From Styela clava (taxonomy: Eukaryota), in assembly GCF_964204865.1 (NCBI RefSeq), contig NC_135255.1, forward strand, positions 7,502,001 to 7,566,000: a DNA stretch of 64,000 nucleotides, written 5' to 3'. Positions 32,110 to 40,022 of this stretch are shown piece by piece; position 1 is the first letter of the stretch; each line of letters starts with the position of its first letter. Under the pieces are notes generated by a model. That model saw nothing but the letters and a program-made list of their open reading frames with translations, did no database searches and had not been told where the DNA came from. A program made the position numbers and the translations under genes.

Positions 32110-35100
32110 TCACAATTCATCATCCCATTTGAAATCACTAAGATCAACTTCTTCTTCTTGAGGTAACTGTAGAAAAAATCAAAACATAGTATGAACGAGA
32201 GAAGAAAATGCATCACTGAAATTACAGAGAATAAATACATATTTCTGATTTGTAACTCTGTTCAGTTCTGTTGGAAAATATATATACCGGTAAAATGACT
32301 AGAATTTTTACATTTTCGGGTCGGGACCTTTTTTTCCCAACGTATCCTTCACAAATGAAAAACACTCTTGGCAAAAAGTAAGATTAGGATTTACATATTT
32401 ATCCTATGAAGGGGAAAGCTGATAAGATGGTATAATCGTATGGCAAATCACTGCCTCTCGTCCAGTTATACTGTACCAGTACATGTCGGGTATGGGATTA
32501 GTTAGTCAGTTATGTTTCAGATGCATGGCCTTGACGGTGCAGAAGCCGTAACCGACCAGCGGTTAATTGAACCGCCCTACGAAGGTGAGGAGTCCAGCAA
32601 TACTCTCAAACATAATTACCCCACACAGCATTCGAACCGGCGAACCAAAGCAGGGTAAGGGTAATCAAAGGTGCAGTGGCAAGCGTATTCCTGATGTTTA
32701 GCATGATGCGGCACACCCCACAATCCTTGATCAAACATCCAAAATTACCTAGGGCTTATGCATCCCCCCCTGTAGCTTGTCAAGCCAACATAAATGAACC
32801 AACTCGCTTTAGAATCAGTGATCAGCTTTGATATATACCTGTCCATCTTTTCCGTCCCAAGGTGAACAATCCACAACGTTTGGAAGTTGAGAATCAGGTA
32901 GAGCGTGAGAATTTCTACCTGCCCTACCGTATGAAATTCCATTCAAGAAAGATTCAATGCCATCATTGTTAAAAGGTCCAGTAAGAACAGTGTAGAATTT
33001 TTTCTTGTCTACAATGACCGCCATTGCCTGTGAGAAATAAATGAAATATAACCTACACCTAATTATTATTTCACGAAAATAATTTTCTATTCAGATAAGG
33101 TGATTAGTTAAATGTTCTGGCTGATAAGACAATTCAGTATTTTTATGCCACAACAAAGCATGAATAATTGATAGTATCAGATTTGTTATTTTTTGCTGTT
33201 TTTTCAGTGTTTGGAGTCATTAAGTTGCATTAACAATGGCGCAAATGAATTTCCCTCTCTAAGCCCATATTGGATGGCAGAAACACAGTGCTGTGCTTTG
33301 AATGATTGAAAAATCTTATCATACATACAGGGAAACCAGATCCACCGATGTTCAAAGCTTTTTCCAAATCTTTTTGTTTTCCAGCTTCAGTCCACACCCA
33401 TCCCCATTGCTTCTTCTTGAATTTTTCTCCCATAGTAGTCAACAATTCCAATGCTTCGTTTCTACCTTTAGCACCTAATGGAGAACATTTAACTTTTGTT
33501 TATAGTATTCCATGTCAAGAAGAATTAAATATCACATTTGCAACTGCAAGAATCCATCAAAGTCGGAATAAATTAGTTTCCCTTATCGTTTCTTAAAGCT
33601 AGCTATCGGGCAGAAAGTTAGTTGCACAGAAATAGTTTAATATCATTCACAAGTCATTTGACATAAAACAGAATACAAAAATTGGTTAAGATTAAGAAAT
33701 ATATTATTTTCATTATCATGAATAAAATACTTGTGCATAAAACACAACTGAATTCTACTTACCAGTATCAAGAATGTCTGCAAGAAAAGAGATAACACAA
33801 AGTTGTTTTCCAATGCAGTTATCTTCTTGCACCTTTGCGGAGATAAGTTCATCAATCTGAAATAAAATATAAATAAAGTCATTTAATACCGTCCTTTGAA
33901 CAGAGAAAACATTCAATTTACTACTATAACATGGCTAATTCAAGCATGATGGAGCATGAATTGGTATTCCATATAAAAACTATTCTCCCTAAACGAGAAA
34001 AAAACTTACAGTTGGTGGCTCAACATTTTCTTCATAGAGTTCCATAGCTGCACTGAATATAGAAGAACTATCCCTTCCACCTTGAAAATCTTCAGGACTC
34101 TCTTTAGCCCCCTTACGAAACACTTTTATAGTTGGGTAGCCACGAACCTGAACATCAGAATTAAATAAACTCAAACTAAAAATGAGTAGTTTTACAAGAT
34201 AGGATAGAATATAGCCATGGAGACATGTGTTTTGGACAATTGAAAAAAGGCCCCAAAAACATTTTGAAAACATGATTTTTTTATATAATAATATTGTAAA
34301 TTATTTTCTATTTATTCCGCACATTGAGTAATTTTCAAATACATGATTTTAAGAAAAAAAGACTTGTAAAAAATTCATGTAAAGTTGACGCCCTGACATA
34401 TGGAAGTAAACAAAAATATTGTTTATCAATATATTGGTACACACCCCATATTTATTCCCAAGTGATTGACTAACAGTAGCATCAACTGCACCCATTCGAA
34501 CTGCATCTCCAACTTCATTTTTCAGTTTGTTAGCAGCAGCTTTCCACTCTGGTTCTAATCTACAGAATAATCAAGCAGTTCGAATATATGAGCATTTTCA
34601 TAAATTTATCAATAGGATGTTAAAATTTGTTTATAGAATGCATATGTTAACTAAAGGCGCGGCCCCGCAGTTTCTACCAGTTATTTGTATCTGGCCATCT
34701 TGTATTAAAGTTGGAAAACCCCTGCTTCACTGTTCAGATGAGTCTCTTCTAGGAGAAGACAATAAAATAATAGAGTTTATTTTTACCGTTTGCAGTGACC
34801 ACACCATGGTGCATAAAATTCAACAAGCCAAGGTTCATCACTGTCCAAAACAAGTTCTTTGAAATTATTATCATTAAGCGTGACAACTGCATTTCCACCA
34901 CTTTCTTGTCTACCTTTGCCCTGCAAGAAGCATCATGAATGATTATGAAAGGCATTCATTTAAAACAAAGCTTGGTATTTTATAATAAAAATGGCACTCA
35001 CTTGTTCCTGATCATCACCTGCTCCACCACTTTCTCTATCTTGGACCATTTTTCTCAAAGCTTGGAAAGCAAAGTCACTAATTTCTTTTTCACTTCTGGC

Positions 35101-38058
35101 ACCTGCAACAAAATTTCAATGTTATGATTCAGTATTGAATATAGGATTTATGAAATTTTCTGATAGTGTGAATTTTGTATCCTGAAAACCATATTGGAGC
35201 ATATGATTTATGAATAACCTATTATTATGATTTATGAATATGTAATATAAACATTATAGATAATCACGACTATTTAAATTGTTATTTCAACTATTTAATT
35301 TAAATTTTTAATTTAAAATTAAAATTTAATTGAATTTTAAATTTCAGTCAGACAGGATTTTTTACACCCCGATCTTAACCAAAAAATATGTCTTATTAAA
35401 GATATGAAATTATAACTGTACCTTGATAGTCTGTTGGTTTATTTTTATTATATCCAAAAACTTTAATAGTTGGGAAGCCTTGGATACCATATGGTCTTCC
35501 AACAGAATCATGTGCCGTCATATCTACTGCTCCTACATTCGCAACACCCTACAAAAATATTGACTATGATAGTACTACTAGCAACTAGATACTATATATA
35601 TCATTAATCTAATTAAACATGCATGTATGAATCTTTCGGATACAGTGATACCTCAGTAGTTGAACCACTCGGCACTAACAATTTGGTAGTCAATCAAAAA
35701 ATTTGTGTTGAAAATGCTGCCGTACTCAAACATAAACTCGGGAGCACTAACACCTGAGCCGAGTGCGCGGCCTATTGAGATTACGTTACCAGGCAGAATT
35801 TCAACCGTTCAACAAGCATCAGTTCAAGTCAGAATTATGACAGGATTAAACATGTAGAGAAACTTTTGTGATTTAGTGTTTTTTTCTTGCCTTTATTAGG
35901 CGTTGATTATAGCTCAAAAAAATAGCGATAAAGGTGTAACCTCCCCCCTTCAATCCTCTAAACATATATTCCTGCCATGTAACCGGTGCTCAAGGGTATC
36001 AATAATGATGCAAATCTTTTCATATTTTCAACTTTTTTATGTTTAATCTTAAATATGTACACATTCAAATAAATATTGTTGTTTAGGTACATGTTTTACT
36101 AATATTTTTGGTATTTTGGAATGCATAAGAACATATTAAAATAATAAACATTGTTTCTTAAGCCAAAAAAATCAATATACGAACACCAATCCTGAACGAA
36201 TTATGTTCGACTACGGAGGTATCACTGTATATGCCATCTGCAAATCAGGATGCCTGACGTTTTTATTGCAAGACTTGCTCTTATGTGTCAAATAAATTCA
36301 GACTAAAGAACGGATATTAGTGAATGTCAGCATTGATCTGAACTTGAATCTCAGCTGTCCAATGACCCAATTTGTAACATATTCGATATGCCATATTTAA
36401 AAATATTATTTAGTTTTGGCCATCTCTCTGTTATAAATATCTTCCAACCTTTATGCAAGCAATCTTCCCACACCATGTCAGCTAAAAACTATTAACTATA
36501 TGCCACACACTTATAATAAATTTTTTTCTCCATGATATCGCCACATATTATGCATCAATGATAAGTATGATTCGTGCAAACTATTCAAACAAACAATTAA
36601 TTACTATTATCTGGGTTGAACTTTCCCAAATGAGAACAAATTCCAAAAATGAAAAACGCGGGAAAATTTATCAAAGAGTTTCTATTTTTTGAATAATTAC
36701 CAACCTGGAAAAAAAAAATACCAAAACCTTCAGACCATCACCAATTTACACTAGATAGGTTTGTAGCATGACCATTCCCTACCACCACATAAATGCCAAA
36801 TGTTTGTTATATATATACCATTATAAATTGAACCCTTGCTTCTGTTATGTCCGAAAGCCATGATTACAGGCACATCAGATGTGGTGACATTATATTTTCT
36901 TGCTAACTTTTTTCGCTTATATACGTTTATCGCACCCAATCTTACGGCACCCTTTAATTTGTAAAAGTTTTAAATGTATCATTTTGTCAGTGCAGATATA
37001 ATTTTAATACTGTATATATTGTAGAATTGTCGCTATTCAGGGTCACATTTTCAGGCATCGGGGCCATTTTATGCCATCATGTACTTCTTTCAAAAATACA
37101 TAAGAGTAACATGATTAGTAATCATTTTTCCTGAAAATTTCTCGTATCTCATTCAGGAATATATTTAGTTAGCATTGTACCAACACAAATGGCAACTCCA
37201 ACACACAAAAAACATACCTTCAATGTTTTAGCTGCCTTTTTCCAAGCAGGTACCAACTGTTGACAATGTCCGCACCATGGGGCATAAAATTCAACAAGCC
37301 AAAGCTCATCGCTGTCCAAAACTTTTGATTTAAAATTTGCTGATGTCAATTCGACAACATCATCACCGCTACTGTATAGTGCACTTGTATATGAAACCAA
37401 TGCCAGTAAGAAACCTGAAACAAAAATTATCATCAAGAATACAGAATAAAGTCCAGAACTGTATAAAGAAATTTAATAATAATTTCTGATAGTCACGAGC
37501 ACTGCAAGCAAAAAAGTCTGTAATTGCGGTTTCAATTACATTTATTGCCACCTCTACCATCAGGCAAGCTTGGAATTGATTTGAATGACATGAAAATCTA
37601 ATCCAGAAATCAAATTGCAGAACAAATTGACTAAAAATATGGGGTTTCCTGAAGCAAACGCAGTAACTGCTTAAATACCCCCAACACAAATATGGTGTGA
37701 AACAGAATGCTGTAAATGCTTAAATAACGCCAAACAAAAATGTGATGAGAAAATACAACCCAAAATTTCATTTTTTTCTAAAAAATAAAAGTCTGTCTTG
37801 CGCGAACACAATACACTAAACGCATGGGACAAACGGAAGGCGGACAACTCGACTCACAAGAGGAAAGATGAGTTGTCCACCTTTTCGACGGGGACATTTT
37901 AAGACAATACGGGTTTAATTTCGATCTTTTTACATTAAAATTTTTGTTGGGTGTTATTTCAGTATTTGAGCAGCTACAGCGTTCATTTTACATCACATTT
38001 TCGTTAGGCGTTACACCCAAAATATGTACCCTAAATACTTACCTAATGCTTTCATCAT
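32110..38058 (-). CDS. PDIA6: Protein disulfide-isomerase A6 (P5), 437 aa
   Basis: Exons 38058-38043, 37414-37218, 35548-35422, 35102-35002, 34920-34787, 34559-34445, 34147-34010, 33856-33763, 33474-33329, 33027-32839, 32166-32110 (1314 nt, all phases compatible). Signal peptide, two WCGHC motifs, P5-type C-terminal domain ([24 protein letters not shown]), C-terminal DDEL. Confidence 0.96.
32385..32720 (-). mobile_element. tRNA-derived SINE in the last PDIA6 intron
   Basis: Reverse complement of the 26061/50278 family; includes B-box-like GGTTCGAATG. Confidence 0.75.
35643..36227. mobile_element. Tc1/pogo (Tigger-like) MITE
   Basis: CAGTGATACCTC...GAGGTATCACTG TIRs with TA TSD; lies between the two versions of PDIA6 exon 3. 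Confidence 0.85.
36819..36951 (-). CDS. PDIA6: Duplicated alternative exon 3 of PDIA6 (mutually exclusive candidate)
   Basis: AG|[45 protein letters not shown]|GT; 133 nt, phase 0 to phase 1 like the canonical 127-nt exon 35548-35422, and aligns to it end to end. Confidence 0.75.
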
Positions 38059-40022
38059 TGCTATATTTTCAGACCGTCAACACATATATGAAGAGATTAT
38101 TTAAATGCAGGATTCGTTAAAACAGTAAGAAATTTGAATAGACAGATTGAAATCAGAAATTTGATCCAAGTTTAGTCAATCACTGAATTATGTTTTGATG
38201 AAATCTTCTAAGAAAATTACAAAAAAAAGGATTCTGAGGTTGCATTACATTATCATACATAAGTCAGTATGGTACGGTAAGTAATCTACATGCAGACATG
38301 CTGACATAAAATTTAACTTATGTCAATTCTTTCATTGTGTGAACTACTCTGCCATAGCAGGTACCGGTACCGTACCGGTTACCAGACTTCTATACCGTAC
38401 TCAGTACGGTACCTACTATTAACAATTTCAGTCAACATAAATGACTAATGCACACATAATACGAAAGTGAATTTGGAACCACGGTACCGGTATAGTCTAC
38501 CTAATCACCGACTGCTGGATTGCGACTATCCCCACAACCGCATACAGAGGCTACCCTTTTTATTGGTACGGTAATAGATCAATCTCGGTACGCTACTGGT
38601 AGACGATACTGGTAGACTAAAACATCAAAACAAAGTTGCATGAAACCTTCATTTGAAAACCACGGAAACGAATCAACGTTTTCATCTGGTGTGACGCCTG
38701 GTTGCACAACTCTGACATCATAATAAAAACTTACAATTTGGCGCAATTTAATTGGCTGTCGCAAAAGACCCCGCCCCAGGCAAGGCAATACGAGCACACG
38801 TGTCCTAAACGCTGGGACTACAAAATCTTCTCAGAAAACTTAGCTCGCGGCATTGTTCGATGTTATTTATTAGTCTTCCTGTCAAACAATGAACGACTAT
38901 TTGAATCATTTAGAAGCTAGTAAAGTTGCGACAGTAATATTCAATTCGCAAAACTGGGGAACAATGTAGTGTTATAAACTTCTTCAAATAGTGATACTTC
39001 TTCAAAGGTTACAGCAATGACATTAACCAATGTCATTGTTTAATGTCATTGGTTACAGCATACCTTCTTATCTAACCGTGGGATGGGTATTTTCCCAATC
39101 ATCAAATTTCCTGTGATATGGCGATTGAAACTTGCTATCATATCAGACACCAATCCTACCATGTTTAGCATAAAAGTCTCTGTTGATCGCTATACATGCC
39201 ATTTGAAATTGATAGCCACTGTGTGCATTCGCAAATTTGGAAAGGTTGATCCCGTCAAATTGAATATATATAGCGGAACGAATATATATTAGATCCGTTG
39301 TCAAATATTTTTAATAAAAATCAGGTTACCTCGCCGTGCGCGTAGATATTTATATAGTGAGTGTATAGCTTACTTCACTGTTCAAGAAAGCGGTGTCTGA
39401 TTTCCTTAATTTGTCTGTGGTTGGTCTCAGAAATCCTCCCCGTAAAAAATTTAAAGTGAGTTTGTTGTTAAAAATGTGCAATACAAATCGGTTCACTTTA
39501 TTGTGCACATAGATATTTATCTCATATATGCTTATTTCAACCGCAACTAATGAGTCAATCAATTTTAAAGTTTTAGTAATTTAAGATGCAAGTAGTCGCT
39601 GAACGCTACCTTCTTTATCAAATTCTTTACAAGCCTCAGGAGACCAATTATATATATATATCACCAAGTTTTGCTGTCTTATTTTAATTTGTTTTAATTT
39701 ACACTTCGATGAAAAATGGAAACACTTTATCCCGCCATTCGAGTCCACCTCCGTACGATCTTCCGCTGATCTTTGCAGCAACCACAGCTAAGGCTTTACC
39801 ATAGTGCTGGTGCGCAAACATCGCGTCCGTCAACCATTGCTATGTTATCATTCTTGTTATTAGTTGACCAGAAGAAAGTCCTGTATAGCACCAATTCAGT
39901 ACCATAATAAAAGTACCATTAACAGTACCATTTTTTAAGGTGAGTTCAACACTGAAAGGGAGGACTGTATATTATTGGATTGAAAGAGCTACCAGGAAAC
40001 TGTCCACATTTTCAGTTACCAT

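What the first reader, a model, noticed from the sequence alone, without database searches (positions are those of the whole stretch)
35422..36951. PDIA6 has a duplicated, radically diverged exon that must be mutually exclusive with the canonical one
Seen: after the first WCGHC exon come two paralogous exons. Canonical: [43 protein letters not shown] (127 nt). Alternative: [45 protein letters not shown] (133 nt). Both go phase 0 to phase 1, so including both frameshifts. Only about 13 of 45 positions are identical, but these include the structural ones (GA, Y, P, I, FG.N, Y); the indel is in frame and there is no stop, which suggests selection. The splice sites are weak (AAG acceptor, GTATAT donor). 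Established: this segment holds the cis-Pro loop facing the CXXC site, which governs substrate binding and redox behaviour. Inference: a splice switch producing a PDIA6 isoform with a rewired cis-Pro loop (GFP to SDVP) and a KRKKLARK basic surface, suited to acidic or polyanionic clients. I know of no such isoform in vertebrate PDIA6.
Basis: partly seen in the sequence, partly recalled or inferred. Interest (0 to 1): 0.8.

Follow-up and report, generated by a model that had tools for sequence, protein, structure and literature searches.

The report
Silent duplicated exon in sea-squirt PDIA6
The sea squirt's PDIA6 protein-folding gene carries an old, still intact second copy of one exon that could replace the normal one, but the RNA data examined show only the normal exon in use.

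Summary
The gene lies on the minus strand and matches RefSeq XP_039254908.2, Styela clava PDIA6-like. Its intron between exon 2 (37414-37218) and exon 3 (35548-35422) holds a 133-nt open segment (36951-36819). That segment is a true, very diverged homologue of exon 3, with the same boundaries, the same phases and AG/GT in place.

Several features argue for protein-level constraint rather than neutral decay:
- codon-position identity of 0.52/0.55/0.33;
- exon-like base composition;
- 0 of 20000 neutral-decay simulations reproduce it;
- its sampled words are intact in runs whose flanking intron differs by about 4%.

The frame logic for mutual exclusion is also correct.

Use of the exon was not seen. 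In 4 of 4 RNA-like runs from four studies, every spliced contig joins exon 2 to exon 3. The alternative exon appears only inside low-depth, unspliced contigs. RefSeq has one model, with the canonical exon. None of 179 full-length homologues has such a segment. Related ascidian genomes could not be reached.

Verdict: a candidate mutually exclusive exon, either narrowly deployed or recently retired. The scan has noted similar exon pairs elsewhere in this genome.

The parts
37218..37414 (-). PDIA6 exon 2: signal peptide end and first WCGHC active site; ends in phase 0
   Evidence: Pfam Thioredoxin E 6.3e-17; the peptide is found exactly in XP_039254908.2; joints 37412>38041 and 35547>37217 in 4 of 4 runs
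36819..36951 (-). Alternative (duplicated) exon, 133 nt, phase 0 to phase 1; encodes the beta3 / helix / cis-Pro loop / beta4 segment of the first Trx domain in a diverged form
   Evidence: no splice joint seen
36952..36953 (-). AG of the putative acceptor (AAG|G), with a poor pyrimidine tract. It is the first AG downstream of a CTGAC branch-point-like motif at 36990-36986
   Evidence: Read; printed. The branch-point consensus is recalled, not tested
36808..36818 (-). Putative donor GT (36818-36817) running into a (TA)5 microsatellite (36817-36808)
   Evidence: Read. The same GTATAT donor type is used by the constitutive exon ending at 32839 (protein continuity)
36754..36969 (-). Whole open frame around the alt exon (72 codons): 6 codons before and 22 after the exon
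35640..36230 (.). Transposon-like insert (MITE type) between the two exon copies, with 26-nt terminal inverted repeats
   Evidence: arms 92% complementary; 45 matches scored in the genome, 286 candidates; RNA contigs break into other copies at 36181-36230 (loose ends)
35422..35548 (-). Canonical exon 3, 127 nt, phase 0 to phase 1; the only one seen in RNA
   Evidence: best PDB matches are PDIA6 a domains at E about 1e-13; joints 35547>37217 and 35100>35420 in 4 of 4 runs at depth 690-1633
35001..35102 (-). Exon 4, the common downstream partner (starts GT GCC...)

Best explanation
This is an old tandem duplicate of exon 3 of the Styela clava PDIA6 (P5) gene. For most of its history it evolved as protein-coding sequence, and it is still fit for use: open frame, AG and GT at the homologous boundaries, the same phases, exon-like composition and few variants. 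By frame it can only replace exon 3, never join it. The product would be a PDIA6 whose first catalytic thioredoxin domain keeps its core and its cis-Pro. That domain would have a changed loop before the proline (two extra residues, V instead of F before Pro). It would also have a far more basic helix (net +8 against +1) and two N-glycosylation sequons. In the RNA examined this form is absent or below about 1% of the canonical form. I read it as a rarely or conditionally used mutually exclusive exon whose context (tissue, stage or stress) has not been sampled. Shown: homology, frame logic, signs of constraint, and lack of use in four runs. Inferred: present-day use and any biochemical effect.
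For: 1. Homology is beyond chance.
2. At E<=10 the alt peptide hits 5 PDB sequences. All 5 are thioredoxin folds, aligned at the homologous place, and one is mouse PDIA6.
3. Identity to exon 3 by codon position is 0.52/0.55/0.33 against 0.28 at random, with no DNA-level similarity: local score 9 against a shuffle mean of 8.9.
4. Neutral decay of exon 3 to the same DNA identity was simulated 20000 times. 5.4% of simulations keep the frame open, 1 reaches score 60, and 0 do both. A codon pattern as extreme arises in 0.46%.
5. P(44 open codons) is 0.026 at intron composition.
6. T and purine content are as extreme as the alt exon's in only 0.05% of 1953 intron windows, and they match the real exons.
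7. 11 of 12 holder runs keep 10 of 10 sampled words of the exon, and one keeps 8 of 10. Meanwhile the X1 and X5 contigs that carry the exon differ from the reference at 33 and 26 places over about 820 and 745 nt. None of the listed places lies in the exon.
8. Frame enforcement is confirmed.
9. It keeps 10 of 23 columns that are at least 80% conserved in the family, among them G, A, Y, the invariant P and F, I, G and Y.
Against: 1. No joint at 36951 or 36819 appears in 4 of 4 runs from four studies. The X1 (36428-37246) and X5 (36502-37246) contigs run straight through both putative splice sites.
2. Contigs that hold the alt exon have depth 2.1-6.2, like intron-only contigs (3.4-8.3), against 630-1630 on exons. 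The tool warns that contig depth is crude and that contigs drop rare forms.
3. RefSeq has one model without isoform label, and both cluster members are canonical.
4. 0 of 179 full-length homologues carry an alt-like segment. These include the two nearest, at 76% and 73% identity, from transcript contigs.
5. No short protein in the 5.8-billion set shares words with the exon.
6. The acceptor is weak (A at -3, poor pyrimidine tract).
7. Pfam Thioredoxin does not detect the alt peptide.
8. 13 of 23 strongly conserved family positions are lost, including the invariant K and the G-F-P-T motif.
9. X13 holds next to none of the sampled words, and its partial contig has 3 unplaced differences.
Confidence: 0.45

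Rival explanations
1. Recently retired exon. The duplicate was a working alternative exon for a long time but is no longer spliced in S. clava. It has not yet had time to pick up stops, indels or intron-like composition.
For: No splice joint in 4 of 4 runs; only unspliced coverage. Single RefSeq model. Weak acceptor. Loss of 13 of 23 highly conserved positions. No Pfam match. No alt-type protein among 179 homologues.
Against: The retirement would have to be very recent compared with the age of the duplicate, whose third codon positions are saturated. The frame, both splice dinucleotides and the exon-like composition are all intact. The exon's words are unchanged in 11 of 12 holder runs while the flanks vary by about 4%.
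Confidence: 0.3
2. Regulatory (unproductive) exon. Inclusion together with exon 3 shifts the frame and sends the mRNA to nonsense-mediated decay, so the exon tunes PDIA6 output rather than making a protein variant.
For: Inclusion of both exons gives a stop 13 codons after the alt exon. Transcripts of that kind are unstable and would be rare in RNA data, which fits the blank.
Against: A decay-coupled exon needs no protein-level conservation, yet codon positions 1 and 2 are conserved and position 3 is not. Fold-core residues are also kept. No 36819>35548 joint was seen either.
Confidence: 0.1
3. Chance open frame or non-exonic sequence with accidental resemblance.
For: Pfam does not call it. Single database E-values are weak, 0.024-0.72 against PDB. 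An open frame of 72 codons is not rare in a long AT-rich intron when all frames are counted (P 0.0025 per frame start).
Against: 0 of 5000 shuffles reach the score, and the next best intron window scores 25 against 60. The window-wide profile E is 1.1e-5. 5 of 5 PDB hits are Trx folds in register. Boundaries and phases coincide exactly with exon 3.
Confidence: 0.03

Closest known systems
Tandem exon duplication-derived, mutually exclusively spliced exon pairs (as surveyed for human genes in PMC8373072; passages found with paper reading)
   Same: Adjacent homologous exons of nearly equal length and the same phases. Including both or neither breaks the frame. The copies differ mostly at surface positions near a functional site. 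The duplication is old.
   Different: Use of the second copy has not been seen here. Conservation in other species is untested. The copy is far more diverged (28% identity) than most described pairs. 'PDIA' has 0 occurrences in the main text of that paper; its supplements were closed.
PDIA6 / P5 (solved a domains 3vww, 4ef0, 3w8j, 2dml)
   Same: The gene has the P5 layout: two CGHC thioredoxin domains, then a non-catalytic domain, ending in KWDDEL. Exon 3 matches PDIA6 a domains at E about 1e-13.
   Different: No PDIA6 among the 179 full-length homologues fetched has a second version of this segment. The alt version replaces the G-F-P-T-I-K motif, which is 98-100% conserved in 131 unique sequences, with D-V-P-V-I-M and adds two residues.
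Other duplicated-exon candidates noted by this scan in the same genome: ERp44 tails, GRP94 client loop, PDE5, a glycosyltransferase, otoferlin (AI notes, not checked here)
   Same: Old tandem exon copies in the same species, three of them in ER folding factors. The notes say some have RNA support and others do not.
   Different: For PDIA6 no RNA support was found.

Membership tests
PDIA6 / P5 gene | Two N-terminal CGHC thioredoxin domains, a C-terminal non-catalytic domain and an ER retrieval signal | tested here: met
   WCGHC in exon 2 and exon 5; ends KWDDEL. Pfam Thioredoxin. Best PDB matches are PDIA6. Exon peptides are identical to XP_039254908.2, 'protein disulfide-isomerase A6-like [Styela clava]'.
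Mutually exclusive tandem-duplicated exon pair | Two adjacent exons that are homologous | tested here: met
   (profile E 1.1e-5 among 2141 open frames)
Mutually exclusive tandem-duplicated exon pair | Either exon alone keeps the frame; both or neither break it | tested here: met
   The exons were concatenated only inside the script to find stops.
Mutually exclusive tandem-duplicated exon pair | Splice dinucleotides at both ends of both exons | tested here: met
   AG/GT at 36953-36952 and 36818-36817, and at 35550-35549 and 35421-35420. The alt acceptor is weak (AAG).
Mutually exclusive tandem-duplicated exon pair | Transcripts exist with each exon alone | tested here: not met
   The canonical joint is present in 4 of 4 runs and the alt joints in 0 of 4. 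These are contigs only, which drop rare forms.
Mutually exclusive tandem-duplicated exon pair | Both copies conserved in related species | not testable with these tools
G000 has no relatives in the genome search. The metagenome scan gave no ascidian genomic locus.
Thioredoxin-fold segment (beta3 to beta5 with cis-Pro loop) | Alignable in register to Trx folds, with the cis-Pro and core hydrophobic residues kept | tested here: met
   5 of 5 PDB hits at E<=10 are Trx folds in register. The invariant P and F are kept.
Thioredoxin-fold segment (beta3 to beta5 with cis-Pro loop) | Reaches the Pfam PF00085 score | tested here: not met
   No PF00085 match at E<=10 for the alt peptide. The 42-aa canonical peptide also stays under the cut-off (21.0 against 23.5 bits).
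Dead (decayed) exon copy | Stops, frameshifts, lost splice sites or intron-like composition | tested here: not met
   Open frame, AG/GT kept, exon-like composition. Neutral simulations do not reproduce it.

The most novel reading that the evidence does not exclude
In some unsampled cell type, stage or stress state, Styela clava swaps exon 3 of PDIA6 for its old duplicate. The result is a P5 enzyme whose first active site faces a rebuilt cis-Pro loop (two extra residues, Val before Pro), next to a strongly basic and probably N-glycosylated surface. That would be a splice-encoded change of redox behaviour or client choice in a core ER oxidoreductase. With the ERp44 and GRP94 candidates noted elsewhere in this genome, it would point to exon-swap diversification of the ER folding machinery in this ascidian.
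Probability: 0.3. Interest if true: 0.6.

Novelty: new member of a known kind. Interest (0 to 1): 0.35.

Why it matters
Alternative exons that arise by tandem duplication are rare. Where they are used, they usually mark functionally important isoforms. None is described for PDIA6: 0 of 179 homologues here carry one. Three full-text searches and a term search within PMC8373072 turned up no such case, judging from titles, abstract starts and found passages only. If the exon is used, it offers a natural experiment on how the cis-Pro loop and its neighbouring helix set the specificity of a PDI-family active site. If it is not used, it is a clean example of an exon copy that looks fully functional by sequence yet is silent. 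That is a caution against calling isoforms from sequence alone.

Tried and rejected
1. The search for homologous proteins with the 44-aa alt peptide found no candidate. It sees only proteins of 24-77 aa, so this says nothing about full-length isoforms.
2. The search of protein representatives with the 63-aa b-domain exon (33027-32839) was meant to reach ascidian orthologues. It returned 41 hits, mostly fragments, and was of no use for orthologous loci.
4. The metagenome scan with the exon 2 peptide kept 80 loci (97 relatives among 590 pattern matches). None holds an alt-like segment. The nearest, L003 (83% identity over exon 2), is cDNA-like with a canonical-type segment directly after exon 2.
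5. Two full-length searches (L003 ORF; P0060) listed 120 proteins each, out of 4121 and 2417 hits. Only the listed ones were examined.
6. Other checks: no rival ORF on either strand, no Rfam family in 35400-37450, and no second copy in the genome.
7. Test of whether alt keeps conserved columns preferentially: 10 of 23 strongly conserved columns against 5 of 19 weaker ones. I dropped this as not significant.
8. The polymorphism argument is only suggestive. 23 difference rows were not shown, the differences are clustered, and the positions of the 10 sampled words are unknown.
10. Papers. Searches were seen as listings only (titles and abstract starts). For PMC8373072 I saw the passages found; its supplements were closed and may list further genes.
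11. The RefSeq naming habit (isoform X labels), the branch-point consensus and the role of the residue before the cis-Pro are recalled, not tested.

Full report
**What is there.** The window holds a PDIA6 (P5) gene on the minus strand.
- Exon 1 ends at 38041. Exon 2 is 37414-37218 and carries the first WCGHC.
- Exon 3 is 35548-35422, exon 4 is 35102-35001, and exon 5 is 34919-34787 with the second WCGHC.
- Further exons follow down to a KWDDEL stop near 32110.
- The peptides of exon 2 and exon 3 occur exactly in P0060 = XP_039254908.2, 'protein disulfide-isomerase A6-like [Styela clava]'. The genome is therefore Styela clava, as earlier notes of this scan had said.

- It is 133 nt and sits inside a 72-codon open frame.
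- It begins after AAG and ends before GTATAT.
- Its boundaries fall at the same residues and in the same phases as those of exon 3 (phase 0 in, phase 1 out).

**Is the resemblance real?** Yes.
- BLASTP gives 12/43 identities, 26.6 bits.
- 0 of 5000 shuffles reach the local score of 60 (max 42). No other window in six frames of the intron exceeds 25.
- I built a profile from 131 unique canonical-type segments of other species, leaving S. clava out. Among all 2141 open frames of the 64-kb window it finds exon 3, the two exons of the second Trx domain and this open frame (E 1.1e-5). The next hit is at E 0.34.
- Against all PDB sequences at E<=10 the alt peptide has 5 hits. All 5 are thioredoxin folds aligned in register, and one is mouse PDIA6 2dml.
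- Pfam's Thioredoxin model does not reach it.

**Has it been under selection?** The evidence points that way.
- At the DNA level the two copies are no more alike than shuffles: local score 9 against a mean of 8.9.
- In the codon alignment, however, identity is 0.52, 0.55 and 0.33 at positions 1, 2 and 3, with 0.28 expected at random.
- I simulated neutral decay of exon 3 to the same DNA identity 20000 times. The frame stays open in 5.4% of the simulations, protein score 60 is reached in 1, and both happen in 0. A codon pattern this extreme arises in 0.46%.
- Base composition is that of the gene's exons, not its introns. Only 0.05% of 1953 intronic 133-nt windows are as T-poor and as purine-rich.
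- The sequencing-run index holds 10 of 10 sampled words of the exon in 11 of 12 holder runs, and 8 of 10 in one.
- The X1 and X5 contigs that carry the exon differ from the reference at 33 and 26 places. All 22 and 13 listed places lie in the flanks.
- That last point is only suggestive. 23 rows were not shown, the differences cluster, and run X13 holds next to none of the words and has 3 unplaced differences in a contig covering half the exon.

**What would the product be?**
- Alt alone keeps the frame through exon 5. Both exons together give a stop 13 codons after the alt exon. Neither exon gives a stop 15 codons after exon 2. The exons were joined only in memory, to find stops.
- The alt segment keeps 10 of the 23 columns that are at least 80% conserved in the family, including the invariant Pro and Phe. 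Exon 3 keeps 21.
- It replaces the G-F-P-T-I-K motif (98-100% conserved) with D-V-P-V-I-M and inserts two residues before the Pro.
- It has 9 K+R and 1 D+E, against 4 and 3 in exon 3. It carries two N-x-S/T sequons, against none.
Whether the domain still folds is therefore untested.

**Is it used?** No use was seen.
- Nine of the 12 holder runs have transcriptome-sized contig sets. I laid four runs from four studies, one of which (X13) held none of the exon's words, on 34700-38200.
- All four behave as RNA. Spliced contigs at depth 630-1630 carry the joints 38041/37412, 37217/35547, 35420/35100 and 35001/34919.
- No joint touches 36951 or 36819.
- The exon lies in contigs colinear with the genome, which cross both putative splice sites (X1: 36428-37246; X5: 36502-37246).
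- Their depth is 2.1-6.2, no higher than intron-only contigs (3.4-8.3). That puts inclusion under about 1%, with the tool's warning that contig depth is crude and that contigs drop rare forms.
- RefSeq has one model for the gene, and both members of its 90% cluster are canonical. They differ at residues 75, 85 and 377.
- None of the 179 full-length homologues fetched has an alt-like segment. These include the two nearest (76% and 73% identity, from transcript contigs), Clavelina and Ciona.
- None of the 80 metagenome loci has one either.

**An oddity.**
- In X12 the contig over the exon ends at 36817, two bases past the donor. Those two bases are shared with the start of exon 4. That is where an assembly graph would branch if some molecules were spliced alt-to-exon 4.
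- However, no joint was listed, a (TA)5 repeat starts at that base, and X13's neighbouring contig ends at 36811.
- I leave it open (note 3).

**What could not be done.** The key comparative test, presence and integrity of the exon in other styelids, was therefore not possible.

**Reading.**
- The duplicate is old (silent sites are saturated) and was coding for most of its life. To be a dead relic it would have had to die very recently.
- I therefore favour a rarely or conditionally used mutually exclusive exon (0.45) over a recently retired one (0.30).
- A decay-coupled regulatory exon (0.10) and chance resemblance (0.03) are the remaining named readings.
- This is a new instance of a known kind, tandem exon duplication-derived substitution (PMC8373072, passages), in a gene family where none is described.
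- Three paper searches and a term search within PMC8373072 (no mention of PDIA) gave nothing on such a PDIA6 exon. The search listings were seen as titles and abstract starts only, and supplements were closed.
- The scan has noted similar exon pairs in other genes of this genome, three of them ER folding factors counting this one (unchecked).

Noticed in passing
window 35640-36230: A 591-nt element with 26-nt terminal inverted repeats (92% complementary), flanked by TA, sits between the two exon copies. At least 45 related copies (72-85% identity, 286 candidates) are spread over the genome. RNA contigs break into other copies at its ends. It looks like a Tc1/mariner-type MITE; that family name is recalled, not tested.
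   Followed up: partly
window 35507 and 35537 region (exon 3); protein residues 75, 85, 377: The two RefSeq versions of the protein differ by N75K, D85E and N377H. Run X5 carries the change at 35507 that gives D85E. The canonical exon therefore has conservative amino-acid polymorphism, whereas no listed variant falls in the alt exon.
   Followed up: partly
window 37037-37084: A cluster of 10 differences within 48 nt is shared by the X1 and X5 contigs in the intron upstream of the alt exon. It is probably a diverged haplotype block or a complex indel.
   Followed up: no
P0038 (413 aa): A PDIA6-like protein of an unnamed organism has a first domain that has lost the CGHC motif and has an extended, changed loop at the cis-Pro position. 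The same segment is thus remodelled elsewhere in the family, there in the only copy.
   Followed up: no
window 37717-37757: Runs X13 and X5 have short contigs in intron 1, one with a 12-letter insert between 37754 and 37717 (table 5c). Possibly another repeat or a small rearranged allele.
   Followed up: no
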